From assembly GCF_037042905.1 (NCBI RefSeq), contig NC_087255.1, positions 22,010,001 through 22,074,000 on the forward strand: 64,000 nucleotides of DNA, given 5' to 3'. Below are positions 1 to 54,363 of this stretch, piece after piece. The notes under the pieces are model-generated. The model saw only the letters and a program-made list of their open reading frames with translations. It searched no databases and was not told the DNA's origin. The DNA comes from Lytechinus pictus. Taxonomy: Eukaryota. The position numbers and the translations under genes are program-made. Position 1 is the first letter of the stretch. Each line of letters opens with the position of its first letter.

Positions 1-159
1 CATTTCTCACCAAACATACGAGGGTGTCTTCTGCATTTGAGACAAACACCCTGGAAAGATTGTCATTCGGAAAACCGTTTCGGAGTTAAGTTCGAGATCT
101 TTTAGAAACTTAAGATTTCAGCAGACTGATTGAACCTACCTTTTCAAAACAACAGCAAC

Positions 160-21100: not shown

Positions 21101-24100
21101 CTATGAATCAAAAGTGCTGAATATTCTTTGAAATTAAATGATCCTGTAAAAAAAGAAAGGACAATCCAATGTTGTAAGAATGATTGATAGATTTGAGGGG
21201 CGTCCTTTTCAAGCCTTTGTGCTTATGACTGTTCCCTCCCATGCAATGATTGTTTATTGTTATTTTACCATGAGATATTGTCAATATATTTTTCTGTTGT
21301 ACGATTTATTTTTGCATGGAAATAAAGAATCAATCAATCAATCAATTTGTTCAATTTGAAAAAAAGTGTATTGGGTATATTATCAGCACGCGAATCGATT
21401 TACTCATCACTGCTCATTGAGTGTACGTGGACAATAAGAGATCAACGACATACACATCTTGGAATTGTCTTCACTCTAAAACAATATTTGGGGAAAATGC
21501 TCCGTGAGGGTAATTATGTGTCCAACCAACATTGCGCATTTCTTTTGGGCATTTTTATATATCAAGTGTGATGAAGATTCGGCCCATTCTAACGTTATTA
21601 CTGCTTATTTTTTAACCTTACTGCACAATATGCTTCCCACATTGGGTGAAATACTGCCCAAAATTGGTTGGACACATAATTACCCTCGTTCTGGTTAAAA
21701 TTTTACCCAATATGTTTTTACAGTGTTGAACGCGTTTGGGATCTGCAGCTGGCGAACTCCGTTTACGCGTATTCCTATATCCTCTGAGGGAGGGCGCTAT
21801 GAGATTATTGCGTCACAGACAAGGGTTTATATTCTTGGAATAATTTGTTCTTTCTCCCACAGTATCACAGCTACCCTTGCTAGTGTCGGGGCAGCAGGCG
21901 TGCCACAAGCCGGTCTCGTAACCTTAGTAATCGTCCTCAACGCAGTGGGTCTACCAGCCGATGACATCACTCTTATCCTCGTCATTGATTGGTTTCTGTA
22001 AGTGACGTCATTTCGATTTATATTCTCCTTTGTGTGCATTAGGTAGAAATAATCAAAACAAAAATCTTAAACTTTGGATGGTGTCTTTTGCTTTCAGAAT
22101 TCAGATGAATCAGATATTTGTAAGAGTGTTTTATTTTACATTATTGTTTAACAGAAACATTTTAAATAACTTATACACTTGTTCGTTTTTATTGTGATGC
22201 TGATATGGATCCTTAACAACCAAAATATGAGTTCAAATCAAATTATCAAACAGATTCTGTATAAAAAAAAATGTGCCTGCTCAATTTACCAATAACCACT
22301 TTAATTGGGATACCGCTCCCTCTACTTCAGTTATTCGATCCCTTGGTTCGTTTTAAAGTCCCTTGTCTCCTTATGTATGAATGTAATTGATTTGAAATAA
22401 AATATTGGGAAAGTTAAGTTACACATTAAAGGTTCTGAGTCATGCAACTATATTTTGCTCTTATTAGTTTTCAATTGTTTTTCTAAGAATTTTAACATTA
22501 TTAATATGATTTATTTATCTAGGATTAATAAGATATTGCTGGTTTTAGAAGTTAATTTCATAGTTTCTCACGCTCATAAGCCCCGCCTCCAGAAAAAGAT
22601 CGAAAACTCTCGAGCTCGCTAGTCACGTGACTATACGTCATCAAGGGAATCTGGCAGCTCTGCAAACTCGATCATCGCGCACGTAAAAAGTTTTCGTCTA
22701 TTATGTTTACGTATTGTAGCGCTGTATTGTTGAGAAAGTTTACCGAGTTCTTTTTGGAAAAGTTTTGTACATTTGTGATATTTGCGATAATATCAAGATG
22801 CCGGCGAGATGCATCGTCGGAGGTTGCAGCAACACTACGAAGGATGGTGCCAGCTTGCATTTGTTTCCCAAAGATGCAAATTTACGCAGAATATGGGTCT
22901 CGAAAGTGAAGTTGACCCGAGCAAATTGGAGCGGCCCCAGTGACTGGAGCGTGGTGTGCAGTAGCCACTTCGAAGATGCGGATTTTGATGACGGGTTGCA
23001 TGCTGCTTTTGGCATGAAGAGGACCCGGCGGCTGAAGCCCGACGCTGTGCCTAAAATAAAGAGTGGGTCATCAATGCAAGTAAAGAGGAGTGGGTCACGG
23101 ACAGCAGCGGACAAACGAAAGAAAATGAGGGTGAGCATATTATCTATTAGTAATAGACTTTGTTTAAAGTTTATCTTTGCAATTGTTGTGGTCAGTCAGT
23201 TCAAGTTCAACGACGGAAAGTGTGAGGATCACGTCAATTTCCTTATTTTATTTATTTTTTATTTTGAAGGTGTTTATGATGGTGGGCCCCAAGTCTGCGC
23301 ATCAAACAATTTGAGTTTAGATTAACATGAATTTCTTCTTATTATTTATTAACAAAATCTTTCCGTTAATAATGTTCCTTATATTATTATTAGTATTTTA
23401 GTAATTGTACTAAATTTCTCATTAAAAAAATGAAAGAAAATAGGCCTATAGGATTTTCTTGGAAAAACCTCGTAGGCCTACTGTAATTTTCAGATTTGTC
23501 AAAAAATGGTAGGCCTACCCCGAGCCCATGTCTGCGCACTCAATCTTTGCACACGATTCGGGGATTTTGATGAGAAAGGCTGCATTTTGATGCCGTCACA
23601 TGAAATGCCCTAAATCCATCATTTTGAGTCAGATTTTTTTTTAAATACCTGTCAGCCTGTAGACCTAGGCTATGGCTAGGTATTGCATGTGTAGAGCTCG
23701 TGCTCGTTGCGTATCTTCTTTTACTAGAATTGCGCTGATACGCGTGTGCGTAGACTTGGGGGAACTTGCCATAGGATACGCCTCGAAAATAAAAAAGGAA
23801 ATTGAAGTGATCCTCAAACTTTCCTCAAGAGTCCAGGCTCCACATTCATGACATTGGAAACAGGTCTACGAATTCTAAATTTCTGTTGCGAATTAGAAAT
23901 CCTATTAATTGTGAGTTGTATTTCAAGACAGGATCTACATTGTAGTACGTGGCTAGTGCTGTGAAGAGGTACAGTAGGCCCAACGTTAGGTCTAAAAGTT
24001 TTCTTGTTTCAGTTGTTTGTGCCATTGTGGTTCATTTCTCAAGTAAGGAAATATACAAACTCTTTTGGGGGTATGGTGGCTCTAGTGGTAAAGCGCCTGC

Positions 24101-27100
24101 CTCATGAACGGGAGGTCTTGGGTTCGATACCCGACCGAGTCATTAAAAAAGGGACCTCCTGCCTTACTAAAATACTAGGCACTCAGCATTTAGATTGGAG
24201 AAGGATAATAATTACAATTACATTCAGGTATTAATTATTATGTTATGCAGGGCCCGGTGGTAGAACAGTTTCCTAACTGAAGTGGCTACCCTGGGAATTA
24301 AAACGTTAGATTATTTTTACCTTTTTTTTAAAAAGCCAAAAAGTTTTTTTTTTTATTCCAGATCCAGATTCCAGGCCTAATATCATATTGTATATTGTCT
24401 CATTTTTATGTTTTGTAATGTTTCTTTGTCTTGATTTTGTATATTTTAATGGAAAAGAAATGAATTCAATTCAGTGTTTGTTTTACAAAGTCATGAGAAG
24501 GGTAAACAAATCTGCATGAAAGGAACCTTCTAAACAACATGATATTATAAGTTTGGACAAAATTGTTCATGCAATAATATACAGAGTTAAAAGATTCACA
24601 ATAATGATTGTAGAAATAGTTTATACCATGGAGCTATACATGTAGATCTATATTTTTTAGAAGAAATTTTTTTTGATAGAAATAAAATTTTTTTAAAGAG
24701 TGTACAGAAATAATGAAAATGGGATGAACTATTGGGCTCTATAAGAATTGATTTGGATATACAATAAGGCATGAAAATTATCTTTGTGATAGCAAATACA
24801 ACATAACTGAATTGATTTAATAATTACAATACAGGGATTAATGTAGAGATACAATGTGCAAAATATAATTAAATTAAGTTATTTGGTTGAATGAGATATA
24901 AATACAATGAAACATCTCAATTGTCATGGTTGAAGATACAGTGGAATGAATGAATTGACAATTTTATTTGAAAAAAAAACGAATTTGTATTTTTGATTAT
25001 TTTCGTGGTATTACATTTTTATACTTGATAAGTCAGAAAGTCTGCCTAAAGATGCAATAATGCAAGTATTGTACTCCGGGAAATAAGTTTTAAAATGTCC
25101 CCAAAGTATTACATATAGATCATTTTGTCTTTTGACATTACTTAATTTGCATATTAATATAGATAGCCCTCAATAATAAAATGTTAGAGCGTTAGAGGTT
25201 CCATGTCCCACCAATGTTTAATTTCTCACTTTTTTTATTTTCTATGATTTTTAATAATTGTAATAAATACTTAATGCTCATTTTACCAATTAAGCAAATT
25301 AGGTGCTCCAATTTGCATAAATATGCATACATCTAATTTCTCGTACTGAAAATTTAAAATGTAATATTTGGACTTTCTTATCCCACCAATGATTACTCCA
25401 TACAATGCATATATGAAATTATGTAGGGTGACTTTGCAACAGTTTGTACTCACTGCCATACATCATAAAGTAGGTAGTGAAATCTAACTGAGGTCTGAAT
25501 GAAAAATAGATCTGAAGGAAGATGATTTCTAATTCCATTCAATTCAATCATGGTTTATTTCATATTAAAAAAAATACATGTTACACAGCCCAAACTTAAG
25601 GCTGAAATTAGCATGTTAATATGTTATTAATTCCTTAAGTTTATTATTTTAGAAATAAGAACACATGGCTATTGTGTATATTTTTCTCTCATTTTTTATT
25701 TAAATTATTCTCACAGATGCTGGATGAATTGCTGTCAACATCTGTTGAAGCTAGGGATGCTGAGGAGCAAGGGTCAGCAGTGGAGCCTGCATCAATGGAA
25801 AGTCCATCAGACACTGATGAGCCAGGATGCAGCCAATGGACAGATGAACATTCATCTGAGTCTGAAGAATCCTTTGATGAACAGGTATAAATTTGTTTTC
25901 AAATTGTGCACCCCCTCCCCGTGAAAAGACATGAAAGCAAACAAACATAAAAGGTAATTTAGCAGCAAATAAGGGATAATATTGAGTAAATTATCAACCA
26001 CAATGAATTTAGCAGAATTTAGGATACATGTAAATTATATTGACATTTTTTTCTTTCCAAAGAAACCAAAACCTTTATGCATGTGATTCAAACAAGACAT
26101 ATGGTTCATGAAAAACTCATAATACTTGTCTTCCAAGTCTTAACATACCTGGCTGTGACTGAAATTACAGTTTATCCCAAAATTGATTCAGGTGTAGTTT
26201 TGATTAGTATTTGTGCTGGAAACCATACTTTATTTATGTATATAATTTTTTTGCATGTCACTGGTAGTGGTATGTACATGTATTCAGCATATTTTGGCTA
26301 CTGTATTGATATCCAATTAACAGCCGTTCAAAGATCCAGCTATGGAATTTCAGCAGCATGGCCATACAACCTCTGTTGGGATACAGGTCTCTGTAGCAAC
26401 AAGAGTTAAACGTAAGTTTATTTTTCATCTGTTTATCTATATTGTCAATTTTCCTTTTGAGGCTGGTGCTGCTAAGTTGTGGAAAGTTTTTGTAAACATA
26501 TGCTCTAGATAATATATTTATTGAGGCTATAAATATTGAATTACTGATATTCATTCCCAATCTGACAGAATCAGTGTCATGTAGTTTAATTAACTTGGCT
26601 ATGATAGTCATGAACATCTATAGCTATTATACATTTACATTTAATAGAATACTGCATCATTCTGTGTTCCTTGTATATTTTTGGATACTTGCAAGCGATT
26701 TTGCTGATTTGCATATGCGCAGTACCAAAACCATTAACAGGAGTCATGCTCAGTATGTCACATATTATTCACAATGTTGCTAGAAAGATAAGTTACGGGT
26801 ACCAATTTGAAGGTGTAAATGTTGCAATTCCACTTGAAGAATAAGTCCTACGCAGTAGTCCGGGCCACAGATAACTTACACCCTGGATTGCAGATATGTT
26901 GTGTTCCCCTATGTCTGAAAATTTGTTTCACAACCAAAGTAAAAGTAAAATATACATGGACATTTTCAGGGTCCCAAAGGGTTGTACTTCTGCAGAACAC
27001 AGGTTCACAGATACCACCCGATATTCCAGCCTTTATTTCAAGAGGGACCTCTTTTGACAAAGGGGATATACCAGAAGAGAAAGTTGATGCGAAGGAAGCG

Positions 27101-30100
27101 GAGGAAGAAAGGTTATCATCTCCAGAAAGTGACGCCGCAGAACCCTCCTCACCTGGATACAAACCACCATCATCTTCATCTTCATCATCAGATGAGCGTG
27201 TTATTGCCAAGCCACAAAAAAGACAGAGAAAACGGTTAGTTCTTTCATTATCCTGTTCAAAATCAATACTAGTACTGTAAATTCTTTTGAGAAAAACCTC
27301 AGACACATATCATAGTGATTTAATAAATAAAGCATTTTAGATAATTTTTCTTATATATTACAGCAACAGCAGGCTGATGAAATTCTTACATCGTCTTTTA
27401 GGATTTTTTTTGTATTTCTAAACAATTTTATTTTTTGTCTTTTATTTCAAATACAGGAAAAGGCGATCAAGCAAAAAGGCCACATGGGAAGCCCCAGCCC
27501 AAGGTATTCCTCCACACAAGGAAAAAAAATACATTGTATACGAGTCTAAGCTTTTGGAGCTGTTGCAGTTTTGCCCATCCTGCAAGTCTGCAAATGTGTC
27601 CCTTGTAAAGAGGGAAGTTGGAAGCCTCCTTTCTGTGACAAGGGAGTGCCTGTCTTGTGACCAGAAGTCGACAACATGGGAGAGCCAGCCATGGATAGGC
27701 CCCTATCCTGCTGGCAACCTCCAGCTGTCAGCGGCAATCCTGTTTGCTGGCGGGAGCCCCAGTGAGTCGCTGCGAGTGCTGAAGCATTTTAACGTAGCAA
27801 CGCACACACGCAGGACTTTCTTCCGACACCAGCAGAAAGTTTTGCATCCAGCTATCACCAATCAATGGCAGAAGCAACAGAACCATCTGCTCACTGAACT
27901 GTGTGAACGGGGTCTGCCACTCACCATTGGGGGAGATGGGAGAGCGGACAGTCCAGGACATTCTGCAAAGTTTGGGGTATACACTGCCCTAGAATTGAAT
28001 GTCAACAAGATTGTTGATTTTCAGCTGGTTCAGGTGGGTCTGATTTTCTGTCCTTAGTTCATGTTCCCATGATACATATGACCACAAGTGCCTAGTTTTA
28101 TTTCATGAAATAGAAAGTAAATATAAAGAATCTGCATTTTTGCCAAGACGGGTTAAGTTGAAACACAATTCCTCTTGTCTTGGTTACTTATTATATTCAT
28201 GTCTGCCAATTTAAATTGATTAAATTTAAAGGCTATTTTGATGTTCCAGCCCCAAACTGTTATTTCATGTTATCACTATTGTGTGTTATGCAATGTTGAT
28301 TTATATTTTGTATTTTGTTTTTTCATAGAGTAATGAGGTGAAGGGTTCGTACCACATGGAGTTGGAAGGTTTCAAGAGAGTTGTCAACTTTCTTGATGAC
28401 AAGGGACTAGTAATCAGGAAGTTGGTAACGGACCGACATAGACAACTTGCCAAATACATCAGAATCACACTTCCACACATTATTCATGTGTATGATGTCT
28501 GGCATGTATCCAAAGGTGAGTAATTATCATACATTTGTGTCTTGCAAAATATATTTAAAATGAAATATTAATTCGACTTGTTTATGATTAAATATTTAGT
28601 GCTTAAACTCCTGGTCCTAAGCAAAAGCAACTATACACTGCTAGAATGCTGCAAGTACTCAGAAAACAATGTGAGTTTTATCTAATTTAATTGCTTACCA
28701 AGTGAGTTTTTTGCTTTACAAGCACTCAAATTAGCGAGCTTCAAAAAACAGCAGTATCTCACTTGTCAAAGGCCTGAATTCTGTGATGTCATTTCATGTG
28801 AAGCGAGTAGTGATTTAGTCCAAAAATTAATGCTTCTATTTCACATTCCATCTCCTTGTTTCTCTTTTGCATCATGCTTGCATTTGGTTTTTCATATAAA
28901 TACGTGAGGCAGTTATCTATGATAAACATTTCGCATGATGTCATCAATTAAGGCATTTTTGTTGTTTTTGTTTTTAGTTTTGGTATATTTTTTATTACCT
29001 ATATTAGGTGTTGGAAAGAAGGTGCATGCCTTGGCGAAGCAAAAGGATTGTGAAGAACTTGTGCAATGGGAACCAAGCATCACCAACCACATGTATTGGG
29101 TGGCTGCAACTTGTGAAGAGGATGAAGACGATCTGAGGGTGGCCAAGTGGAAGTCTCTTATGAACCACATCCAAGGGATCCATGAAGGTCATTCTGAAGT
29201 CTTTCCCAAGTGTCTTCATGGTGACTTGCAAGCTCAAGGTCGCAAGAAAAAATGGCTCACACCAGGTAAATTCATGAATAAGATTCATTTGTTTAATGTT
29301 AGATCTGTATCATATGAAACAAGAAAAATCAAACCTTATGAATATTGTATTTTCCTTACCTACCAATACCATTCATTATCAATTTATGCCATTACTCTCA
29401 TAAAGTATGTTGATTCAATTTTATTGCATTTTTTCCATTTTGAAAACTGTAATTATGACGTTACCTGCTCATTAAGCATGATACACTGGTTACCTAAGGC
29501 AACAATTGTTTAATGATTCCGCTCCTTTTGTATCCATTTTTCAGGCACAAAAGTCTGTGAAAAACTAACAGGTATCGTGCAAAGCACCATGTTGTTGAAC
29601 GATGTGAAAAAGTTGTCTGGAGACCAACAGACATCTTCCCTGGAGTCATATCACAGTCTGGTGAACCGGTATGCGCCCAAGCTGAAGTCCTATTCGTATG
29701 AAGGAATGACTAGCAGGTAAATGCACTATATATTCTATGAGAAGAGTTACATTGGACCATGTTTCTTTATTTAGCATACACACAAAATAATGTGGGTAAT
29801 TCCAAGCAAAAGTGGATATTTATAGGACTCTATTAAAAAGGGTAGATCTAATGTTTGGATTAAAACCCATATGGAATAATGCAAATGGTTTTATAACCCC
29901 CCCCCCCAAAAAAAGTCTGACAGATAGTAAGAGGCAGTGGCGTACCTAGGATTTTCCACAGGGGGGGGGGGGGGGCAAAATCGGCCGCCAAAAAAAAAAA
30001 AAAAAAAAGGTCTTCAATAAAAAATAAAAGGTTATTGTACCAGAAAAAAAAAAGAAAAAAAAGGTCTTCAATGAAAAATAAAAGGTTATTGTACCAGAAA

Positions 30101-33100
30101 AAAAGAAAGAAAAAAAAGGTCTTCAATAAAAAATAAAGGTTATTGAAAAAAAATTGAAAAAGCAAAAAAAAAAAAAAAAGGTCTTCAAGCTCGTCAGGGG
30201 GGGCAATAAAGGTATTCAAGTTCGTCAGGGGGGGGGGGGCATAAAAGGTCTTTCAAGCTCGTCAGGGGGGGGGGGCAGTGATATGTATTTTGTATGGGTT
30301 GTTGCTCGTCCCCCCCGTAGGTACGCTAGTGGTAAGAGGCCACATTCATTTTATAAAATTAAAATTCAAGCATTAGTTTGAATAAACTTAACTTTGGTAT
30401 TTCGTGATCATTCCATGTGGTATGGGTATCAAATGAAAGAGCAGACAGTTTTATGTTTAAAATTCAGATAGCCCTGATAAGTGACTTTTTGGTATCCTTT
30501 CTTTGAACTGTTTTTCTTGTGCAAGAATGAAAAATCTTCTGAGTTAAACCGGGTGAAAAATAAAAGCAATTTGCATGTTGCATTGTGTTTACGCACTGTA
30601 TTAGACATGCTTTTACTATGTGCATTTATTTTCTGGTTATCATTCAGGCTCAGACTTGCTGCTATGGACTTCAATGAAAATGGCAACCGACAGCAGGCAA
30701 AAACGTTGAAAGGGGACAAGCGGTACATGGTCAGCAAACCAAAGTACAAGCCAGGGAAGGCATCAGTGAAAGCTGTTAAGGAAGCAAAAACATTCAGTGA
30801 GTTTATTTTGTTCTGTGTGTTATCGACTATAGGTTCATCATCATATCAGAAACATATTATGAAAAAGGATGATTCCATGGCAATGATTCATTACTAGAGT
30901 AACATCAGTTAAATCCTACTTTTCTCATGTGTTATGTTGATCACTATAACTGTTCTCAACAATATAATCTATAAAGATTAAAGAGCTTTTTTTTTTCCTT
31001 GATGCCCATTGGTGGTACATTTTATAGCATACTAACATGGCATAAGAAAAACACTGGTAAATCAATACCATCCAACATATTTGTATATCCATTAGCTGGT
31101 CTAGCTGACCTGTACATGTTGAACCTCACTTTTTAACCTTTTTGTATCTCAGAATTTGTTGATGATCTGATGGATGAGGTCAGACGATTGTGCACAGGAT
31201 CATCTCAACTGCCAGAGAGGAAGGAAGCCCCGCCATCTTTATGCAGTGAATATACCTTTCCTCCCAAGGAGGAACTTGTTCAGGATCACCGAAGTCGTTT
31301 TAATTAAAATAAGCGAACTGTAAACCCTATCATGCTAATATCGTATACAGCTTCATGATAAATTGGAACGAATGAAAGATTGAACACATAAGTTCATTTA
31401 AGAGAAAATTTAGTTACTCTATTGAAGAAAAGATTCCTTATGATTAAACATGCCATTTTCATCTGATGAACTATATTTTTTAGCGAATTTTATATGAAGA
31501 CATACATCTCTGATGTACATGTAGTTGTACAAATAACATTGTGAAGGCAAAACAGATGACTGAGCAATTTGATACCTTTGCTTCAAAATTATTAAACAAA
31601 AAGAATCATATCTATTATGGAATTATATTTGTTTAAGTTTTGTTCAACAGTAAAGTCGACCACATACTTGTGAGTGATCAGTTACATAATTTTAAGGAAA
31701 TATTGTTGGGAAAGATTTGTTCAACAGTAACACATGTACAATTCTTCTTTGCAAGGAGTTTTGTTAGAAATACTATTCATTTGAAACGTTGGTCAATGAT
31801 TATCATGATGAGTTGTGGTTCAAAATCTCTCATGCTGGCCGGTTACGACCACTGTAGCTCCAACAGTGGTTTCCAAAAGAAAACTTTCATGGTCTATACA
31901 ATTTCGGAATACTAGTAACTGCAATAATTGTATAAAATTTTGAAGATTTAAGAGCATTATCAGAATGTTTTCTCTACTGTGTTATTTGCATGTAATAAGT
32001 AGATATTTCTTTACATAAATGTGATTGTATTTATAAATGTAGATGAAGTAGTTGAAGTACATTTGATATGCATGTCAAAGTATTTCACGTTTTAGCCAGC
32101 TGAATTTGATGACTCGGATATGTGTCGTGTAGCTTAAAAAAAATCTTGCATGACCTGAAGCAACGGCTACTAAAATCAGAAAACATTTTTTTAAAGCATT
32201 TTTACAAGCAACTCTGTAAGAAGTTATATAGCATGTATTACATAGATATTTCTTTGTATGAATGTTATTGTGTTTATAAATGTAGGTGAAGTGGTAGAAA
32301 TACATTTGAAATGCATTTCAAAGTGTTCCATGTTTTAAACAGCTGAATTTGATGATTCAGGTAGCTTCCAAAATCTTCCCTGATGTAACATCTACTAAAA
32401 TTGGAAAACATTTTTTTCCCCCCAATTTTTTCAAGCATTTGTACAAGCAACTCTGTAAACTACCTCCATGGTTATACTTATCTTGACCCATTCAGGACAG
32501 GAATTAATTAACAACTAAAGTGATCACATTTCGTTCCTCAAATGGGCAACAGCAATATTTATTTTAATGCTACATGCTTCCAATTGAATGTGATGTCTTT
32601 GAAACCAACATACATGGTTTGGAACTTGGATAATATTTTTTAAACGCCAATTTCGATGAAAAACTCTGGTCTTCAATTCTTCCAATGTGTTGCCAATTTG
32701 AGGAGTTTAAAGATTATCCTCATAAAATTCCTGGCAGTATGGTCACTCAACAATGAGTGCAATGTATGCATAGTTTTTTTTTCTCTCTTTTACTAATGTA
32801 CCTGGTGTAATTTTTAGAGCTCTGAAACAAAAATGATTTACCTTAACCACTTAAGGTCGATTGTCCTGAACGAGTTAAGCCATAACATGTCTATTGACCA
32901 GCTTATATTTATTCATATTTATGTCTCTTGCACTCATTTCTACTTGCAAATCAATGCTTCTCTGAGAATATAATAGTTTGCAGGATTTTTTAACAAAAAA
33001 AAAAGCATTCTGTCTCTTGTCTTTCTACAGCTACTGCATAGTTTATGGTAATACAGTCCACTACCATTATATGTGCACTGGAAGGACGCTCTTGTTGCAA

Positions 33101-36100
33101 TGCTCCAAATGTCTAAACTGTGCATTGGCATATTTTTTATGCAAGTATAAAGTGTAAAATCAATGCCGCATTTATTTAGAGGTAATTGATTTGGCCTGGA
33201 AAGTCTTATTATAATGGGAGTGGACTATTGTAATTTTAGACTGAATATTGTTGACAACCATAAAGGATTTTTATATGTAGGTTTTAAAAATGAGATCACC
33301 GAGACTGTACATTGCAAGTTGGCAATTTGGAAAGTAAATTATAACAAGTGGTAGGGACAACTTTCCAATGGGCTGTATACTCAGTTCTCAGGGAATTGTG
33401 TATTACCCATAAGTAGGGCCCCCTCCCGGTAGTACTTGAAATATCAGCATCTTTTATGTTCCTGAGCAAAAATACCATATATAATTTTAAGTAAAAATGT
33501 GAATAAAAATAACTTTTTATGCAATACACATTTGTGTATATTGGGCAAATGGAAAATATTCCCTCCATCAAGATGACAGCATCAATACGGTGAAGCCTCC
33601 ATGATAGTTAATGGTATACAAATTACAAATTTTTACAACTTTCAGAAATTCATAACTTTCTTGTTACTCCGATATAATACACTTTCACCTATTGTATTAT
33701 TTTTCTTTCCCCTCTTTTAACAACTTTTTATCTTGGTTGGATTCCTCTTTACATGCACTCTTGCCCCTTGGGCCTGTTTCATAAAGAGTAACAACAGTTG
33801 GTAGTTTTGTCATTATGGCAACTACCATGGTAACCTTGATTTTGATTGGCTGCTGAGCAATGTTACCATGGTAATTTCCATAATGGCAAAGTTACAACAG
33901 TCACAGTTCTTTATGAAACGGGCCCCAGATTCCACTATCGCTCTTTTGTCCCTCTTTCACATGTTCTCCACTTCCATCAAATCTACATTGTACAATGCTC
34001 TTACCTCTGAATTTAAATACAGATAACTCTGCCTAAGTCTACCTTATATTCATCTAAGTCAAAGCAATTTTGCAACATTCAATCATTCATCTATCATCCA
34101 ACATTTCCTAGCCTGTAGTCTTGCCCGGGGCTACTGCCATTGTCTTTTGCGTTCAACTGTTAACAGTGGGCTACAAAGTAGCACAGCCTATACACTCCGG
34201 TCCTGCATTAATAGTTGCCGTTGTTTATCAACAACAGACAACACATAATTTTAGTATGAAACTTCCACACCTATTTGTTGACCATAATTTAAAAAAATTG
34301 ACCAACGCTAACTGTAGTATAAGCTGTGGGCTGCAAATCGTTGTTTGTTTACATTAACAGTTGGCAGCAAAAGACAATAGCACCAGCCGCTGCCTAGATT
34401 ATAGGCCAAACATACCCAAAATGTTTGGTTTCATTAGTTCACTCTTGTTATAATGATAATCAGATAAAGTAATTTATAATGACAGGCAGTTTTCCAGTAC
34501 CAATTTCATATGTACTGCATGAGTGCTGCCATAAATATTAAGATTATAACAGAAGTGGACTGTAGTAAGACTGCCTAAACTGACTTTGGAAAAGAACGCA
34601 AGAAAATTAAGTTGGTTTGAACACCTTTATTTAAAGAAAACAGAAATAAATACAATCAGCACTTCCCTGTTATTTCATCAAAACATACAATAATAAAACA
34701 ACTCTGAGTGCTTGTCTTTAGCACAGTGATAAAAACATCAGAATCTTTATGACTTTTTATCAGTCAAAAATGTGACAAAAAGAAATTTTCTTCTACACAC
34801 CAGGTATACTTGGCAAAAAATTTCTTTCAAATTACATGTACTTCTAGTTGAGAGATCACAAAATAATGGCACTCGATAAAATGTTTAAGACTTAAGTACA
34901 TCCAGTCCTTGTCATGGAATCAATCATGTATGTCTCTGTTGATTCAGAGGCGCCTTCATTGAAATCAACATAAAAAAGGTCTACGCATCTTCAAAACCTC
35001 TGTAAATGTCCGATGGATAAGTAGCTCGGATGTGAGTCACCGCACAGGAAGGTAGGGGGACGCGCACAGATCTCCCTAGAAATCCCCAACACCATCTTGC
35101 GAGCTGCCGATAGCCAACGTGCCTGTGTTTCCTACAAAAAATAAATAGAAATTAAAAATAAGTAAATCAGATACAGAACATCACATGATTTCTAAATCTA
35201 CATCATTAAAATTTCCCCTAAATCCTACTGACTACCATTAGCGGCGGAAGTCAAAAAATCTAGGGGGATTACCAACATTTTTTGACAAGCAACCCCCCCC
35301 CCCCCAATAAAAAAAGTTATCAACCAAAATTTTAGGGGGGGGGGACAAGAAAATCTTTTGACAAGCAAAAAAAAGGTGATCAAATAAAAATTTAGGGGGG
35401 ATCGTCCCCCCACCTCAAATTTAGGGGGTGGGGACACGTTCCCTCCCCCCCCCCCGCCTATGCTGACTACTACATGTGCATATATTTTAGGTGATTCATA
35501 AGTAAGGAGGGGGTTGTAGTTAACACCTCTGAGTCAAAAAAGAATAAAATTGAAGACTGCTAATGGAAATAACCATTCAAAAATATATATCACCGTAGCT
35601 CATTACAACACTTACCTTATGTCTTATGATACATATTTTCATAATTTTAAATGATATAAAACATGATACCATTCAGGACAATTGAGTATTTTGAGTTGAT
35701 AAAAATCATGTTTTTTTTTATAATTTTTTTCTTATTCCAATATTAGATTGCAGAAAATAAGTGCAATTGTTCATGAAAAAACACTCACTCATTTTCAGTT
35801 GCATCATGCCGTGCTCTGTCACCATATTGCTGACGATACCCTAAGTATGCAGTGTCTAAAACCCACGGATTTAAACAAACCCCTTCAAAGCCAGGGTGCT
35901 CTGTGATGCAGTTCAGTTCTGCAGCAGTGTACTGGTCCATCATCGCCACTACCTGAGCCACTTCTTTGCAGCAGTACGACTCGACAACTCGAGGCATCGC
36001 TTGGCATCCTCCGCTGCATGAACACCTGCATGAACAACAGAAATTTGAAAAACAAAATGAAAACATTTATTAGACTGCAAGATACCAAGTGTTAGGTCAA

Positions 36101-37196
36101 GTAAAATGATTCCTAGTTCACTCCATCGAATTCGAAGCGCCTCAGCTCAGGTCAAAGCATCGGGCAGCAGCCACAGCTCAGATCCGTTCACCAGCCTCGT
36201 TTCGGCTTTTAATAGCAACGTAACTGAGCTGTGTTTCCAGCCGGAAGCGTCGGGTAGCAGCGGCTGCAGCGCACGCTAGTGCTCCGTCACTTCCAATCCG
36301 ACCTTCTCAGATGAGACATCTTTTTCAGACACTCAGGGTACTAGTTACGGAGTATTAATAATACGATTATGTATGAGATAATCTTACCAATTGTTGTTTC
36401 CAAGTCTACCCTCAATGTCATTTTCTTGGATGGCACCAACATTCTGAATTTCTTCCCCTGGTTGGAACTCGGGCTCGAATTGGTACGGCAAAATACCCGC
36501 TGCTTGCATGCCAGCAGGAATATCAGGACCGGCCTCTACTTGATTTTCTCTGGCAAATTCTTCTTCTTGCTCACTCTCTGAATTCGACCATGGAGAATCT
36601 TGATCAGATGACAAGTGGGCAGGATCATATTCACTCTCTGATCCTGAAAGATCACTCATGATTTGTGCTTGAATTTAAAATGTTTCGCGAGAACTTGTTG
36701 TGAAAATTCAATGGATACGCGCGCTTGGCCGAGCGATCCCACTGCTTGATATTCCCTTGATGACGTCACACAACGATTACGTAATCGGTAGACTTTTGAA
36801 CAATTTTAGTGGGCGTTCCCTAACCGTGGTCTTTTTCCTGATTTGTGTCGAATTGAGACAAAATTACGGGAAACAATTGCCAGATTCGTATTCAGCATGA
36901 AAAATTGCATATACTACATCATAATAAATTTTTTTGAGGTGACAATGTCAGAAAACCTTTAAAGCTACCATGTCCTTATTCGGCCTCTTTTCCACAGGGA
37001 CCGTGTCCGTACCACAGTCAACGTAGAGGGCGACTCGTTCGGTTGCGGCATAATTTACAAGTACACCAAACCTGACTTTGACCGCATCGACCAAGAGAAT
37101 ATGGAGAAAGCATTGACGAACGGTTACCACAACGAGAAGAAAACCCCCATTGATATGCTGGATGGTAACATCTCCGGAGACGACACACGCTTGTAA
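160..37196 (+). CDS. SLC1A: SLC1/EAAT-family Na+-dependent acidic amino-acid (glutamate/aspartate) transporter, paralog A, ~537 aa; exons 160-396, 1544-1791, 12170-12212, 15148-15470, 16397-16630, 20348-20542, 21863-21997, 36998-37196
   Basis: All introns are GT-AG with consistent phases (1614 nt total). Family motifs: [39 protein letters not shown] (HP1), [24 protein letters not shown] (TM7), [12 protein letters not shown] (HP2), [16 protein letters not shown] (TM8). The symbol is family level only; a specific vertebrate ortholog cannot be assigned. Confidence 0.93.
833..1054. mobile_element. Palindromic MITE
   Basis: GCACT...AAAACAAAT..GTCAAA..TGACTAG is mirrored by CTAGTCAATTTGACTAATTTGTTTTAAGAGTGC, with an internal inverted pair CAGCTGGGTGCAAC / GTTGCACCCAGCTG. 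Confidence 0.7.
1208..1525. mobile_element. MITE with 3-bp AAT TSD (PIF/Harbinger-like)
   Basis: TIR GGCCCGTATTCTGAAGTC..GTTTAA... at both ends, AAT on both flanks, second copy at ~5370-5620. Confidence 0.8.
2231..3110 (+). repeat. Exact 94-bp direct duplication (2231-2324 and 3017-3110)
   Basis: Identical AAGGTTATTATTG...GATTTCTTTCAAC. Confidence 0.9.
4422..4694. mobile_element. MITE
   Basis: TIR GGGCCCCGTCTTACAA..TTACGATTGATCCG / CGGATCAATCGTAACTCGTTGTAAGACGGGGTCC. Confidence 0.7.
5370..5620. mobile_element. Truncated second copy of the 1208-1525 MITE
   Basis: High identity to 1208-1430, followed by another TIR start (GGCTCGTATTCTGAAGTC) at ~5592. Confidence 0.75.
6057..10452. mobile_element. 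Non-autonomous TIR element hosting a nested foldback insertion
   Basis: 18-bp TIR CTGCACCATCCCGAGTTT (6057-6074) / AAACTCGGGATGGTGCAG (10435-10452). The palindrome AATCTCGAGATT or close variants repeats near both ends. No clear TSD. Confidence 0.65.
6143..9672. mobile_element. Foldback-like element with long inverted arms and an internal ~177-bp tandem array in head-to-head orientation
   Basis: TAGACGGGTCAATATA (6143) / TATATTGACCCGTCTA (9672). Arms 6176-6500 and 9330-9649 are near-identical inverted copies. About 10 forward units (AAGTTACAAGGACAGTCAGTGG...CAAGATGGC at ~6547, 6725, 6900, 7076, 7253, 7430, 7607, 7783, 7960, 8137) and about 6 reverse units (8380-9250). Confidence 0.85.
11402..11768 (-). 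pseudogene. Decayed fragment of an Ig-domain gene with a hydrophobic C-terminal tail, antisense within intron 2 of paralog A
   Basis: 11768-11576 encodes ...[25 protein letters not shown]... (Ig E/F/G strand pattern). After a TTTTCAG acceptor, 11541-11402 encodes ...[15 protein letters not shown]. The intervening 34-bp spacer starts with GA rather than GT. Confidence 0.55.
15893..16165. repeat. Interspersed repeat; other copies at ~16690-16930, 18782-19020 and 57950-58140
   Basis: Shared GTCGAAAAT.GGTGAATCAAAAC...CGGTTCACCAA.TTTCGACAAA...GGGCATTTTCAATA. Confidence 0.7.
17175..17410. repeat. CACAGTGTG-rich interspersed repeat, with an inverted copy at ~55000-55260
   Basis: CACAGTGTGTTCACATTGTAGAACACAATGT matches the reverse complement of ~55220-55251. 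Confidence 0.65.
19692..19991. mobile_element. G/C-tract MITE
   Basis: Ends CAGAAGCGGATCTAG / CTGGATCCGCCCCTG. Confidence 0.6.
22798..31307 (+). CDS. THAP-domain DDE transposase (Kolobok-type), ~783 aa; exons 22798-23130, 25717-25884, 26324-26411, 26970-27234, 27457-28033, 28329-28515, 29008-29265, 29545-29716, 30648-30796, 31153-31307
   Basis: N-terminal THAP C2CH (CIVGGC...W...CSSHF...LKPDAVP), an acidic/Ser linker, a basic NLS-like KRQRKRKRR and CxxC...CxxC. Catalytic-type motifs: [33 protein letters not shown]. The spliced ORF is uninterrupted (2352 nt). Exons 2-4 are less certain than 1 and 5-10. Confidence 0.85.
24068..24320 (+). mobile_element. tRNA-derived SINE in transposase intron 1
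   Basis: A-box-like GGTGGCTCTAGTGG and B box GGTTCGATACC, followed by a non-tRNA body and an AT-rich tail. Confidence 0.7.
29935..30331. mobile_element. hAT-like MITE nested in a transposase intron
   Basis: TIR CAGTGGCGTACCTA / TAGGTACGCTAGTG, perfect 8-bp TSD GTAAGAGG (29927-29934, 30332-30339), internal A-rich/G-tract repeats. Confidence 0.85.
33770..33927. mobile_element. MITE carrying X-box-like and CCAAT motifs
   Basis: TIR GGGCCTGTTTCATAAAGA / TCTTTATGAAACGGGCCC; relatives at ~4020-4161 and ~48500-48630. Confidence 0.7.
34981..36659 (-). CDS. Transposon accessory protein (KolX-like) resembling the P2X7 C-terminal ballast / nanor-like Cys-rich domain, ~219 aa; exons 36659-36388, 36025-35789, 35131-34981
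   Basis: The 660-nt spliced ORF has an acidic N-terminus with PYQFEP, then WCSCSGGC...ESYCC...[18 protein letters not shown]...[17 protein letters not shown]...LPSC...IRATYP...YRGF. This is colinear with the P2X7 tail (WCQCGSC, ELCC, CITTS, RHCAYR, LPSC, IRKEFP, YSGF). Confidence 0.85.
35236..35462. mobile_element. hAT-like MITE nested in an intron of the KolX-like gene
   Basis: 8-bp TSD CTGACTAC (35228-35235, 35463-35470); ends CAT..GCGG / CCGCCTATG. Confidence 0.75.
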
Positions 37197-44409: not shown

Positions 44410-47400
44410 ATGGATGAGGTGGGCATCAGAAAATCAAAAGGCTTTGACAACGTAACATCCACTCTGAAACAGGTCGCGCAAGATATCGGAAATATATACC
44501 AAACGACGATGAATGGGGATGTTATCCACGACGCCGACGACGCCGTCGCCTTGGAGAACGGTGAGATGACGGAGTTTCGTGATAGCGACGAGGAGAGCAA
44601 TAGCGGTAAGCGACGATGTCCGTCATGGCTAAACGCGGAGAACATCCTCCTCTTCCTCTTGATCTTCTCCGTTATCATGGGCTTCGTGCTCGGGTACGTG
44701 CTCGGGCTCTTCTTTGACTTCACCCAGGATCAGATCAACTACCTAACCTTTCCTGGAACACTCTTCATGAACATGCTGAAGATGATGATCGTTCCCCTCA
44801 TCGTGTCCAGTCTCATCAACAGTCTGGCGTCGCTCGACTCGGCGATGTCGGGTAAGCTGGGGCTCAGGGCGGTGTGTTACTACATGTTGACTACCTTCAT
44901 CGCAGTCATCCTCGGAATCGTTCTCGTGGTCTCCATTCAGCCTGGTAATCGAGGCGGAGCAGAGAAAGACCCCGATGGCGAAGAGGAAGAGGTTAATACA
45001 GCCTACGCCTTCATGGATCTTATCTTGTAAGTCATGATTTTTTTTTCTGAATTCTGACGAATCGAAAATGACCACTGAAAATAATAGGGACTGTCATTAA
45101 TGATTATGAATAACGAAGTCAATGATTTAATGTGGTTTCTAAATTATCATATTTTGTGCTATTTTACTTTTGAGTTTCTGTATTCCCGACTTGTAATGAG
45201 GGTAGACGTGTGTTTTGTTTATTCATTCAGGATGATTTTGTAGTTTTGTATTGCATGACGAAGATTAAGAAGATCTTGTTGATGGTGAACGCAGAAGTGT
45301 GTTGGCATTTATTTCATGATGATTTTGTCAATCGATTTGTTTTTAAAGTTTGTGATTTCAATGAGACTGATGACGGAGAATATGATGGTGGTGATTATGA
45401 TAAAAATGATGGCGGTGACGATTTTCATGATTATTCCACTTGTTAAGATAAATAATATAAGTTCAGGTAAACGTCCATGGATTACAAAAGGTATGTATAC
45501 TACAATCTATCAAAAGAAGAAATGTCTTGCAAAGAAAATAATTCCCGTAGAAATTAATTACAAGGAATATTTACACGAGAGGTTCGAATAATCTATTTTC
45601 CTAAAATCAGCTGATCATCTTAAGATATTAAACATTGTTAAGTCTCTCAAAAACAGTAGGTCATTTGGGCATGATGAAATAAGTTCAGCATTGCTAAAGC
45701 AAATAATTGGCTCAATCCTAACTCCTTTACTACATAATAATCTGTCCATTTCAACTTGTGTGTTCCCTTCTTTTCTCAAACTAGCCAAGGTTATTCCTGT
45801 TCATAAAATGGGATAGCACCACCACCATACGTAACTATAGACCAATTTCAATTTTGTCTAGTTTTTCCAAAAAAAAATGTTTATAACAAATTAATCCCCT
45901 TTCTCGACAAAAATCACCTTTCAATCCCAACCAGTTGGATTTCACAGGTATCACTCAACGGACCTTGCGTTGTTGAAATTTTGTTACTATAAAATGTGTC
46001 CAGTTCTCTGGCAAATCGTTAGCACGTTATTGGTGTATTCTTCGACCTGAGCAAGGCATTTGACACCCTTGACCATTCAATACTGTTTCATAAGCTTCAT
46101 CATTATGGAGTAAGGGGCATTTCCCTAAACTGGTTTACTAGTTATCTTTCAAATAGAAGACAATAGACATGCTAGATTTTTCTTATTCTGGTATATCAGT
46201 TTTAAGGTGCGGTGTACCGGAAGGTTCTATATTGGGTCCTTTGTTATTTCTGATTTATATCAATGATATTTTTTTGGTGTCAAAAACATTAAATAACAGG
46301 TTGTTTGCAGATGACACAAGTGTTTTTCTATCACACCGTGATATTGATATCTTAGAAAACACCATTAATGTCGAACTTTCGAAACTATCTAATTGGTTTC
46401 GAAGTAATATGTTATCACTGAATGTTAAGAAAACAAATTATATACATTTTAAAGTTAGGAATTCAGGTGCTGACCATGATTTAAGATTGAAACTTGACAA
46501 TGCTTTGTTGGAAAGAAAGACGTCTACTAGTTTCCTTGGGGTCTACATTAGTGATCAACTTAATTGGAACGATCACTTGAAACACATCAGTAAACCAATT
46601 TTTCGAAATATAGGTATACTATATAAAGTCTACCTTGTACCTGGTAAAATACTATACATTTTGTACAATACTCTTATTCTACCTTATGTGTCATATTGCA
46701 ATATTCTTTGGGCAACATCAAGGAGTGTCACAAACACAACTATCCTATTGCAAAAGAAAGCTGATGAGTTTCTCTTTCATATCCATGCAAAATAATTTCA
46801 CAAAATGAAAAATGATCCTCTAGATTTGGATTACCTTTTTTCTTTACCTACCTGCTTCTTAGTATTTTCTTTTATACATATATGTATTTTGTATTTTCAA
46901 AGGTGTGACAACGGCTCAAGCATCTGCTTATATTGTCATCAGCTGAAAGTCTGCCACTTTCATTTTATGTNNNNNNNNNNNNNNNNNNNNNNNNNNNNNN
47001 NNNNNNNNNNNNNNNNNNNNNNNNNNNNNNNNNNNNNNNNNNNNNNNNNNNNNNNNNNNNNNNNNNNNNNNNNNNNNNNNNNNNNNNNNNNNNNNNNNNN
47101 NNNNNNNNNNNNNNNNNNNNNNNNNNNNNNNNNNNNNNNNNNNNNNNNNNNNNNNNNNNNNNNNNNNNNNNNNNNNNNNNNNNNNNNNNNNNNNNNNNNN
47201 NNNNNNNNNNNNNNNNNNNNNNNNNNNNNNNNNNNNNNNNNNNNNNNNNNNNNNNNNNNNNNNNNNNNNNNNNNNNNNNNNNNNNNNNNNNNNNCGAGTT
47301 TGACAGTGGTAATTTGGCAATGGCGACGATGGTAATGATTATGGAGGTTAGGATGTCGGTGCTGATATTGATATGTAATAATGATGATCACGATCGCGAT

Positions 47401-53400: not shown

Positions 53401-54331
53401 TATCCAACTAGTGAGAAACGATGTATCGTTAATAATGTTAAACAATTACCATGAACTAATTATTTGCCTGGAACCAATCAAAACAAAACAATACAATACA
53501 ATACAGACACAAAAAATGAACAGAAATGAAATAAATCAAAAACGATAAAGCAAAACAAAACAAAGGGAATCATAATTCTCATTCTTGAAAATGATAGTAA
53601 ATTAAAAAAAATCCACTAATAATCCATGTTAATCCTACTTATCTATTTGATATGAATGGGTTATCCGGGGATGATTAAAATGACACGCCCATTTGCGTCA
53701 ATTCGTCAGATACTGCACGAAAATATAAACACAGCTGCCACCTATACCCCATTTTCCCGCCAATTCTCATCACATGATGTTGATTATATCCACCAATACA
53801 GAGATGATTGAAATACATATCACGCTCGCATATGACCTCAAATCGCACTTTCCAGGACCACATAGTAGTATATATGGTCCCTTGAGCATTGCTGAGACTT
53901 GAGAAAACTATACAAATCGACTCTTCTGTCCGAAATCATCCCAAAGCAGTATCGTAAATATTGAAATTTCTACCAATACCAATACCGAATATACCAGGAT
54001 TCTTAGAATCTTATCCAAGCAAAGATTGCGACTTCATGACCATGTCAATTGAGAGAACGTCAATATCATCTTGTCAATTCCTTAATTTATATGTATCCTC
54101 AAGATATCGAGAATAAATGTGTGATGATGCTGCAACGATGAATATTTTGAGACGATTGCATGATGAGAGATTGATTATGGTGCGACATTTAATTTGCCGA
54201 GATTTTGATAATGGTGACCGATGGGTTGCCCAGTTGTGTCAAGAAATGATAAGATAATGAATGATTGAAACGTTTCTCGTATGATGAGAGTGATAAGTTG
54301 GTATCAATGCTGGGGGAGGAGGAATGCATGG

Positions 54332-54363
<32 letters not shown>

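What the first reader, a model, noticed from the sequence alone, without database searches (positions are those of the whole stretch)
22430..36958. Intact, intron-rich two-gene Kolobok transposon inside a host transporter intron
Seen: TTAA duplication, AGG/CCT ends, a 10-exon transposase with an unbroken frame and all three acidic catalytic candidates (DGRAD, TDRH, LESYH), and an unbroken 3-exon partner gene. The secondary insertions I found (SINE, MITEs) all fall in introns or the intergenic part. Inference: both ORFs have been kept under selection, so the element is recently active or domesticated. The host spliceosome must skip ten sense-strand exons, so premature termination or chimeric EAAT-transposase transcripts are possible.
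Basis: partly seen in the sequence, partly recalled or inferred. Interest (0 to 1): 0.75.

Follow-up and report, generated by a model that had tools for sequence, protein, structure and literature searches.

The report
Young, intact two-gene Kolobok transposon
This is a complete, very recently mobile 14.5-kb "cut-and-paste" Kolobok transposon of the sea urchin Lytechinus pictus, sitting in the last intron of a glutamate-transporter gene. It is a well-preserved example of a kind described in 2007 and 2022, not a new kind.

Summary
Window 22430-36958 is a 14,529-nt element with AGG...CCT ends and a TTAA duplication. It carries a 10-exon, 783-aa THAP-DDE transposase gene (+) and a 3-exon, 219-aa partner gene (-), both unbroken, with GT-AG at every intron.

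The transposase model equals a RefSeq protein of Lytechinus pictus residue for residue. That protein is encoded at four places in the assembly:
- Two further elements are 100% identical to this one over all 14,529 nt, sit in different flanks and each have TTAA on both sides.
- A fourth is identical over 14,509 nt and lacks its last 20 nt.

Similarity stops exactly at the proposed ends, so the boundaries are proven and transposition was very recent.

Copies in the sister species L. variegatus lie at other loci. The transposase shows dN/dS 0.10 and the partner gene 0.16 between species. The element is therefore active rather than domesticated.

Motifs match the published Kolobok and KolX alignments (Kol0 lineage, PMC9587614), so this is a new member of a known kind. 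The scan has already reported other Kolobok elements of this genome; one note describes four identical 14.5-kb copies, probably this family.

The annotated host gene ends at the exon just before the insertion.

The parts
22426..22429 (.). Left copy of the TTAA target-site duplication
   Evidence: Every other copy also has TTAA at this junction, with unrelated flanks.
22430..22444 (+). Left terminal inverted repeat, short and imperfect (AGGTTCTGAGTCATG)
   Evidence: alignment of the two ends. It is identical in the L. variegatus copies. Identity between copies starts exactly at 22430.
22635..22650 (+). 16-nt subterminal motif ACGTCATCAAGGGAAT, 206 nt inside the left end and 148 nt upstream of the transposase ATG
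   Evidence: only two matches in the window, inverted, one at each end; 0.04 expected. It is conserved letter for letter in both L. variegatus copies.
22798..23130 (+). Transposase exon 1 (THAP zinc finger)
   Evidence: Pfam THAP E=6.4e-17; exon model.
23215..23824 (.). MITE-like unit with 39-nt inverted ends in transposase intron 1
   Evidence: pair I2, 87% complementary. It lies within a stretch that also aligns to the L. variegatus copies.
24070..24142 (+). tRNA-Met-like head of a SINE in intron 1
   Evidence: ARAGORN and Rfam tRNA at 34.4 bits. The same stretch is present in the L. variegatus copies at 87% identity.
25717..25884 (+). Transposase exon 2 (acidic linker)
26324..26411 (+). Transposase exon 3 (small exon, found through the L. 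variegatus homologue)
26970..27234 (+). Transposase exon 4 (Ser/acid-rich linker with a basic KRQRKRKRR stretch). RefSeq isoform X2 is 20 aa shorter here.
27457..28033 (+). Transposase exon 5: zinc ribbon and first catalytic Asp ([14 protein letters not shown])
   Evidence: it matches the published Kolobok alignment.
28329..28515 (+). Transposase exon 6: second catalytic Asp (VTDRH) and the C/DxxH signature (YDVWH)
29008..29265 (+). Transposase exon 7: H2CH-type zinc-finger stretch ([18 protein letters not shown])
   Evidence: the motif is described in PMC6004289.
29545..29716 (+). Transposase exon 8: catalytic Glu ([10 protein letters not shown])
30648..30796 (+). Transposase exon 9 (conserved LAA..NEN..R..PK.K.G block)
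31153..31307 (+). Transposase exon 10, with stop codon TAA at 31305-31307
34111..34406 (.). Inverted-repeat (MITE-like) unit in the intergenic part, with 53-nt arms
   Evidence: pair I1.
34981..35131 (-). KolX exon 3 (C-terminal part of the P2X7 ballast-like domain, with stop)
   Evidence: Pfam P2RX7_C at 28.1 bits against a cut-off of 23.5. It aligns to human P2X7 residues 546-592. Model.
35789..36025 (-). KolX exon 2 (Cys-rich core: [29 protein letters not shown])
   Evidence: It matches the published KolX alignment motif by motif.
36388..36659 (-). KolX exon 1 (acidic N-terminal part; ATG at 36659)
   Evidence: The annotated gene has the same span in all four loci.
36751..36766 (-). Second copy of the 16-nt subterminal motif, 193 nt inside the right end and 92 nt upstream of the KolX ATG
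36943..36958 (-). Right terminal inverted repeat (AGGTTTTCTGACATTG read inward)
36959..36962 (.). Right copy of the TTAA duplication
21863..21997 (+). Host SLC1/EAAT exon before the insertion. The donor GTAAGT at 21998-22003 overlaps an in-frame TAA (21999-22001).
   Evidence: Pfam SDF E=3.7e-12, profile positions 321-364 of 387; sequence. The annotated gene ends at 22001.
36998..37196 (+). Last coding exon of the host EAAT gene ([15 protein letters not shown]..., 65 aa plus stop). Its acceptor lies 35 nt after the right TTAA.
   Evidence: The paralogous exon is at 61125-61232.

Best explanation
This is an autonomous DNA transposon of the Kolobok superfamily, Kol0 lineage, in Lytechinus pictus chromosome record CM073236.1. 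It inserted very recently at a TTAA in the 467-nt last intron of an SLC1/EAAT glutamate-transporter paralogue, 35 nt upstream of the acceptor, and stretched that intron to 15.0 kb.

It carries two facing genes. One encodes a 783-aa transposase with a THAP DNA-binding finger, a zinc ribbon, an RNase-H-like D/D/E core with the C/DxxH signature, and an H2CH finger. The other encodes the 219-aa KolX protein, which has the zinc-binding 'ballast' domain known from the P2X7 receptor tail.

Shown here: the structure, the intact frames, the boundaries, three identical full-length copies plus one copy without its last 20 nt, and purifying selection on both genes.

Inferred from the family: the transposase binds the element ends, cuts out the element and reinserts it at TTAA by cut-and-paste. 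The binding site may be the 16-nt motif that sits inverted about 200 nt inside each end and is conserved across species. KolX acts as an accessory factor of unknown biochemistry. Each end also serves as the promoter region of the gene that faces away from it.
For: 1. TTAA duplication and AGG...CCT ends.
2. The 10-exon model equals RefSeq protein P0400, 783 of 783 residues. The 3-exon KolX model of 219 aa equals the annotated gene span.
3. P0400 is encoded at four places in assembly GCA_037042905.1. L002 is this locus. L003 and L004 hold elements identical over all 14,529 nt, with unrelated flanks and TTAA on both sides. L001 is identical over 14,509 nt.
4. L. variegatus copies L005 and L006 have the same termini, TTAA and 16-mer but lie in other loci, one of them in an intron of an ASCC3-like helicase gene.
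5. Between the species, transposase dN/dS is 0.10 with dS 0.116, KolX dN/dS is 0.16 and 0.10 in the ballast part, and well-aligned introns differ by 6-9%.
6. Family membership: Pfam THAP; weak Mutator/MULE hits as expected for a Kolobok core; motif-for-motif agreement with Kolobok-1_XT and Kolobok-1_BF in the published alignment and with the published KolX alignment; Pfam P2RX7_C on KolX exon 3 and on the whole annotated product.
7. Neutral-decay simulation: both frames stay intact in under 5% of runs beyond about 0.7% divergence.
Against: No transposition event, excision footprint or empty-site allele was seen.

Identical copies come from one assembly. Two of the four lie on unplaced scaffolds that could be alternative haplotypes, although their flanks differ from the two chromosomal loci.

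CpG observed/expected is 0.5 over the element and 0.35 in parts of its body, against 0.8-0.87 in the flanks. The family may therefore be methylated in the germ line and currently silenced.

Placement within Kolobok rests on motifs and published alignments read by eye, not on a tree or a Repbase/Dfam classification.
Confidence: 0.9

Rival explanations
1. The pair is a domesticated (host co-opted) transposase and KolX kept by host-level selection at this locus, and no longer a mobile element.
For: Both frames are intact and dN/dS is low. Xenopus has many domesticated Kolobok transposases that keep all motifs (PMC6004289).
Against: The ends and TTAA duplication are intact, and there are three identical full-length copies plus a fourth at unrelated sites. 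L. variegatus copies are at non-orthologous loci. No diverged single-copy gene at a syntenic position, the mark of domestication, was seen.
Confidence: 0.03
2. The element is intact and young but no longer moving. On this reading it is silenced by DNA methylation or small RNAs, or it lacks some host factor, and the identical copies are the residue of a burst that has ended.
For: CpG depletion of the element body (0.35-0.5, against 0.8-0.87 in the flanks) fits long-term germ-line methylation of the family. Only four copies encode this exact protein.
Against: Zero differences across about 58 kb of copies leave very little time since the last jumps. The promoter-bearing ends keep their CpG (1.14 and 0.88). 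RefSeq lists two transposase isoforms, which hints at transcript evidence that I could not inspect.
Confidence: 0.3
3. The identical copies arose by segmental duplication or assembly error, not by transposition.
For: Two of the four copies lie on short unplaced scaffolds. Part of one scaffold's flank is 100% identical to the start of this window.
Against: Identity begins and ends exactly at AGG...CCT, and each full copy has its own TTAA pair and unrelated flanks. A duplication would carry flanking DNA along. L003 lies on the same chromosome record about 100 kb away in the opposite orientation.
Confidence: 0.03
4. It is a piggyBac-type element, the other superfamily with TTAA duplications, not Kolobok.
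For: TTAA target duplication. A few piggyBac families are reported to encode a KolX-like protein (PMC9587614).
Against: The ends are AGG...CCT, the RR/YY type that the paper contrasts with piggyBac. No piggyBac transposase family was hit in Pfam. The core matches the Kolobok alignment, including [13 protein letters not shown], TDRH, DVWH and LExxHS.
Confidence: 0.01

Closest known systems
Kolobok Kol0 lineage (type family Kolobok-1_XT of Xenopus; Kapitonov and Jurka 2007; Kojima and Bao 2022, PMC9587614)
   Same: TTAA duplication, 5'-RR...YY-3' termini, and two genes (DDD/E transposase plus KolX). The core motifs are the same: [13 protein letters not shown], IVDF, TDRH, DVWH, ITNHxxW, KWxxP and LExxHS. 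The KolX motifs are also the same: WCxCxxC, MP, ExxCCxE, CIT, HPGFxxVCL and YRQxxxWCW.
   Different: The family is in an echinoderm, a phylum not named in that paper's list of hosts, although sea-urchin repeat tables already list Kolobok. The transposase is only about 36-58% identical to the non-Lytechinus homologues found. KolX has one extra residue in the first Cys cluster (C-x-C-x3-C).
Xenopus XKol full-length elements and T2-MITEs (Hikosaka et al. 2018, PMC6004289)
   Same: Size class (6.7-13.9 kb there, 14.5 kb here), TTAA, AG(G) termini, the transposase motif set THAP + DDE + H2CH, and repetitive near-identical copies taken as a sign of current activity. One Xenopus subfamily's terminus shares the string TTCTGACAT with the right end here.
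   Different: Different species and subfamily. The terminus here is AGGTT, not the AGGRR of T2-MITEs. No derived MITE family with these exact ends was found in this window.
The same family in Lytechinus variegatus (RefSeq LOC121414191 and LOC121431169; loci L005, L006)
   Same: Same ends, TTAA, 16-nt subterminal motif, ten exons at the same positions, and a 783-aa transposase that is 97% identical.
   Different: About 6-12% nucleotide divergence, and different insertion sites. KolX is damaged in both L. variegatus copies: a 3' deletion removes the stop in L005, and another transposon sits in exon 1 in L006. All L. pictus copies have it intact.
P2X7 receptor cytoplasmic ballast domain (Pfam PF20478; McCarthy et al. 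2019)
   Same: KolX exon 3 passes the Pfam cut-off and aligns with human P2X7 residues 546-592. The Cys-rich pattern is shared.
   Different: KolX is a stand-alone 219-aa protein with an acidic N-terminal half and no channel part. Exon 2 alone gives no significant sequence match to P2X7. The fold of this very protein was not predicted here.

Membership tests
Kolobok superfamily | [quoted passage not shown] | tested here: met
   TTAA on both sides here, in the two other full L. pictus copies and in both L. variegatus copies.
Kolobok superfamily | Termini 5'-RR ... YY-3' (unlike piggyBac) | tested here: met
   5'-AGG ... CCT-3'. The limits are proven by where identity between copies stops. The criterion is taken from PMC9587614.
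Kolobok superfamily | DDD/E transposase with the C/DxxH signature between the second Asp and the Glu | tested here: met
   GGDGRAD, VTDRH, YDVWH and LESYHS are in that order. The columns are conserved in 10 full-length homologues and correspond to Kolobok-1_XT and Kolobok-1_BF in the published alignment (read by eye).
Kolobok superfamily | THAP DNA-binding domain and H2CH zinc finger (usual, per PMC6004289) | tested here: met
   Pfam THAP E=6.4e-17. The AVPxI box reads DAVPKIK. The stretch [18 protein letters not shown] lies between C/DxxH and the Glu (by inspection).
Kolobok superfamily | Placement inside the Kolobok clade in a transposase phylogeny, or a Repbase/Dfam classification | not testable with these tools
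   No Repbase or Dfam library is available here. Only a motif-level comparison with the paper's Data S5 was possible.
Kol0 lineage of Kolobok | A second gene encoding KolX, a P2X7 ballast-like protein | tested here: met
   Pfam P2RX7_C at 28.1 bits (cut-off 23.5) on exon 3. The precomputed P2RX7_C hit on the 219-aa product is seen in all four loci. Motifs match Figure S6 of PMC9587614.
Kol0 lineage of Kolobok | The seven conserved zinc-ligand cysteines of the ballast fold | tested here: inconclusive
   By inspection the cysteines of WCSCSGGC (3), YCC (2), NCIT (1) and PSCA (1) are present. Spacing in the first cluster is one residue longer than in the published rows, and no structure of the joined protein was predicted.
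Currently active autonomous transposon | Several identical copies at different sites, each with its own duplication | tested here: met
   Three copies are identical over 14,529 nt and a fourth over 14,509 nt, all with unrelated flanks.
Currently active autonomous transposon | Insertion polymorphism, an empty site, excision footprints or observed transposition | not testable with these tools
No DNA search of echinoderm genomes is on offer.
piggyBac superfamily (considered because of TTAA) | piggyBac-type transposase core and piggyBac-type termini | tested here: not met
   No piggyBac family appears among the Pfam hits of any exon. The termini are of the RR/YY type.
Domesticated Kolobok transposase gene | Single-copy gene at a syntenic locus, without transposon ends | tested here: not met
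   The element is multi-copy with intact ends, and the L. variegatus copies lie at other loci.

The most novel reading that the evidence does not exclude
This insertion may be a very young, possibly still segregating allele that has disabled or rewired one of two tandem glutamate-transporter paralogues.

It sits 35 nt from the acceptor of the last exon, in the same orientation as the host gene. The annotated host product stops at the TAA that overlaps the donor, so it lacks the TM8 end ([13 protein letters not shown]...).

The host donor leaves two bases of a codon. That is in frame with transposase exons 5 (27457) and 9 (30648), so an EAAT-transposase fusion lacking the THAP finger is formally possible.

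With intact ends and both genes, the family would also be a ready candidate for a first laboratory-active Kolobok and for finding out what KolX does.
Probability: 0.2. Interest if true: 0.5.

Novelty: new member of a known kind. Interest (0 to 1): 0.35.

Why it matters
I found no report of a Kolobok element moving in a laboratory assay in the papers read here, and those papers leave the role of KolX, the likely ancestor of the P2X7 receptor tail, untested. A family with three letter-identical full-length copies, intact ends and both genes under purifying selection is about as good a natural starting point for such tests as one can find.

Locally, it is a clean example of a fresh 14.5-kb insertion that inflates a 467-nt intron 32-fold, right next to a splice acceptor of a transporter gene. 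It can show how a host gene copes with ten sense-strand foreign exons. As biology it is otherwise ordinary: a known kind of transposon doing what transposons do.

Tried and rejected
- **Reads:** No RNA or DNA reads could be laid, and read laying was not used.
- **First exon model:** my first model had nine exons. It was open but 43 aa short and was corrected with the L. variegatus homologue.
- **Word search with one exon:** it found only fragments up to 65% identical because of the length window. A search with alignment A2 (a full-length homologue plus four exon references as separate rows) reached the RefSeq proteins.
- **PDB sequence search with KolX exon 2:** nothing meaningful. Exon 3 matched P2X7 only weakly.
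- **Scan notes by sequence:** blank, which means nothing according to the operators.
- **Paralogous empty site:** the last intron of the second EAAT gene is not alignable with the host intron. Only its length, about 525 nt, is informative.
- **Derived MITEs with these exact ends in the window:** none found. The TTAAAGGTT sites at 1965 and 52436 belong to other elements.
- **Interspersed repeats shared between the element and its flanks:** only one old 66%-identical repeat and short hits.
- **Joined models:** the joined spliced proteins were never sent to a search or folding tool. They were built only inside scripts, for translation and comparison with P0400. No structure was predicted.
Full report
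**What is there.** The window is AT-rich animal DNA. Scan notes, and later the RefSeq names, identify it as Lytechinus pictus; from the locus coordinates it corresponds to CM073236.1 at about 22,010,001-22,074,000. At 22426-22429 and 36959-36962 stands TTAA, and the stretch between begins AGG and ends CCT. The two ends form only a short, imperfect inverted repeat: AGGTTCTGAGTCATG against AGGTTTTCTGACATTG. A 16-nt motif, ACGTCATCAAGGGAAT, occurs exactly twice in the 64 kb, inverted, 206 and 193 nt inside the two ends (0.04 matches expected by chance).

**The transposase gene.**
- Plus-strand open segments contain a THAP finger (Pfam E=6.4e-17) and the motifs DGRAD, TDRH and LESYH.
- Exon 5 alone has thousands of relatives. 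Full-length relatives laid on the window by tblastn gave sharp, consistent exon limits.
- A nine-exon model was open and colinear with ten full-length homologues. It kept every conserved column: zinc ribbon, W-SQP, GD-R-DS-GH-AK, LVQSNE, TDRH, D-WH, the H2CH stretch, QTS-E-HS and NEN.
- A profile search was made from one full-length homologue plus four exon references as separate rows (alignments; search). It brought up a 783-aa L. variegatus RefSeq protein. This protein matches the model except for 43 extra residues.
- Those residues are encoded in the window by a small exon (26324-26411) and an earlier acceptor of the next exon (26970).
- The final ten-exon model, all GT-AG, translates to 783 aa. 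It is identical, residue for residue, to RefSeq protein P0400 of L. pictus, listed as LOC129279419/LOC129279622 isoform X1.
- The joined protein was built only inside scripts. Searches were done exon by exon, by reference.

**The partner gene.** On the minus strand, three exons (36659-36388, 36025-35789, 35131-34981) give an open 219-aa protein with canonical splice sites. Exon 3 passes Pfam's cut-off for P2RX7_C (28.1 against 23.5 bits) and aligns with human P2X7 residues 546-592. The annotated gene has the same span and a P2RX7_C hit in all four loci. Its motifs are [32 protein letters not shown] and [13 protein letters not shown]. These match the published alignment of KolX proteins row for row.

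**What kind it is.** Kojima and Bao (PMC9587614) define Kolobok by TTAA duplications, RR/YY termini and a DDD/E transposase with the C/DxxH signature. They define the Kol0 lineage by a second protein, KolX, that has the P2X7 ballast fold. Hikosaka et al. (PMC6004289) add the usual THAP + DDE + H2CH motif set and full-length sizes of 6.7-13.9 kb. All of these features are met here. The core reads like Kolobok-1_XT and Kolobok-1_BF in the paper's Data S5, with [13 protein letters not shown], IVDF, TDRH, DVWH, ITNHxxW, KWxxP and LExxHS. piggyBac, the other TTAA superfamily, is excluded by the termini and by the transposase. I could not run a tree or a Repbase/Dfam classification.

**Other copies prove the boundaries and the youth.**
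- The exact protein P0400 is encoded at four places in assembly GCA_037042905.1.
- L002 is this locus.
- L003 lies on the same chromosome record about 100 kb away in the opposite orientation, and L004 lies on scaffold JAZDCF010000293.1. Both hold elements identical to this one at all 14,529 positions. Their flanks are unrelated and each has TTAA on both sides.
- L001 (scaffold JAZDCF010000121.1) is identical over 14,509 nt and lacks the last 20 nt.
- Identity starts and stops exactly at AGG and CCT, which rules out segmental duplication.
- There are no differences in about 58 kb of copies. If one assumes about 1e-8 changes per site per generation (my assumption, not measured), that allows on the order of ten thousand generations or fewer since the jumps.
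- A simulation of neutral decay shows that both frames and all splice sites survive in under 5% of runs beyond about 0.7% divergence.

**Selection and history.**
- Two L. variegatus copies (L005 in an intron of an ASCC3-like helicase gene, and L006) have the same termini, TTAA, the 16-mer at the same offsets, and ten exons at the same positions.
- Against L. pictus, transposase dS is 0.116 and dN is 0.012, giving a ratio of 0.10, alike in the N-terminal part and the core.
- The KolX ratio is 0.16, and 0.10 in the ballast part. Well-aligned introns differ by 6-9%.
- Both genes have therefore been under purifying selection along the lineages that link the two species' copies. Because the insertion sites are not orthologous, this is selection on a mobile family, not domestication.
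- The two L. variegatus copies differ from each other by 2 nt in the coding sequence. Each has a privately damaged KolX.
- The tRNA-like SINE head (24070-24142) and the MITE-like unit in intron 1 are shared by the copies of both species. They are old passengers of the family, not later hits on this copy.
- CpG is depleted in the body (0.35-0.5) but not at the two ends (1.14 and 0.88), while the flanks are at 0.8-0.87. This fits methylated bodies and open promoters; that reading is an inference.

**Host context.**
- The exon ending at 21997 is SLC1/EAAT (Pfam SDF, profile positions 321-364 of 387).
- The exon starting at 36998 encodes [15 protein letters not shown]... plus 50 more residues and a stop. 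The element therefore lies in the last intron, in the same orientation as the host gene.
- Without the element the intron would be 467 nt. A tandem paralogue further along the window (about 44.7-61.3 kb) has about 525 nt at the same place.
- The insertion is 35 nt upstream of the acceptor. A branch-point-like CTTAT remains between them (by eye).
- In the annotation, the host gene call ends at window 22001, a TAA that overlaps the donor, and no gene call includes the last exon. A gene predictor may simply have stopped at the nested gene.
- By codon phase, the host donor is in frame with transposase exons 5 and 9 only (computed from the exon lengths).
- Reads that could settle this were not available.

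**Verdict.** The thing is a new, exceptionally well-preserved member of a known kind (Kol0 Kolobok).

Noticed in passing
L001:1-2122 and window 1-2122: The flank of the fourth copy (scaffold JAZDCF010000121.1) is 100% identical to window 2122-1. The match is cut only by the locus start and the window start. The scaffold may be an alternative haplotype of this region that carries an extra Kolobok copy about 7.5 kb beyond the window start. If it is colinear further on, it might hold the empty site of the present insertion.
   Followed up: partly
L001:23963-24141: In the fourth copy the last 20 nt of the right end are missing, and an annotated WD40-repeat gene call starts inside the element's right subterminal region. 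This echoes the scan note on a WDR70 fragment beside a one-ended Kolobok.
   Followed up: partly
window 21998-22003: The donor of the host's last intron (GTAAGT) overlaps an in-frame TAA, so any read-through ends the protein at once. The paralogue has the same arrangement (CTGTAA at about 60607). The annotated host gene stops here, and the N-terminal exons (window 160-1795) are annotated as a separate 162-aa gene.
   Followed up: partly
window about 300-37196 and about 44690-61300: There are two tandem SLC1/EAAT paralogues on the plus strand, with eight colinear exon pairs 42-73% identical at protein level. Only the first carries the Kolobok.
   Followed up: partly
window 51887-52445: A palindromic MITE of about 560 nt is flanked by TTAA and has Kolobok-type ends (AGGAC... 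/ AGGTT...). Related copies lie in the flanks of L003 and L006. Beyond AGG its ends differ from those of the 14.5-kb element.
   Followed up: partly
L006:23029-26846: In one L. variegatus copy another transposon, with a 532-aa gene that has Pfam DDE_1, is inserted in KolX exon 1. In the other copy (L005) a deletion of about 1.5 kb removes the KolX stop codon and part of the intergenic region.
   Followed up: partly
window 31981-32458: A tandem duplication of about 240 nt (74% identical) lies in the intergenic part of the element and is present in the L. variegatus copies too.
   Followed up: no
window 29880-30280 and 35228-35533: G-run and A-run tandem repeats (periods 31-54) lie in transposase intron 8, with similar G-rich pieces in KolX intron 2 in the opposite orientation. 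The intron 8 stretch does not align between the species.
   Followed up: no
window 46971-47294: This is the only run of N in the window (324 nt). It is outside the finding and was left untouched.
   Followed up: no
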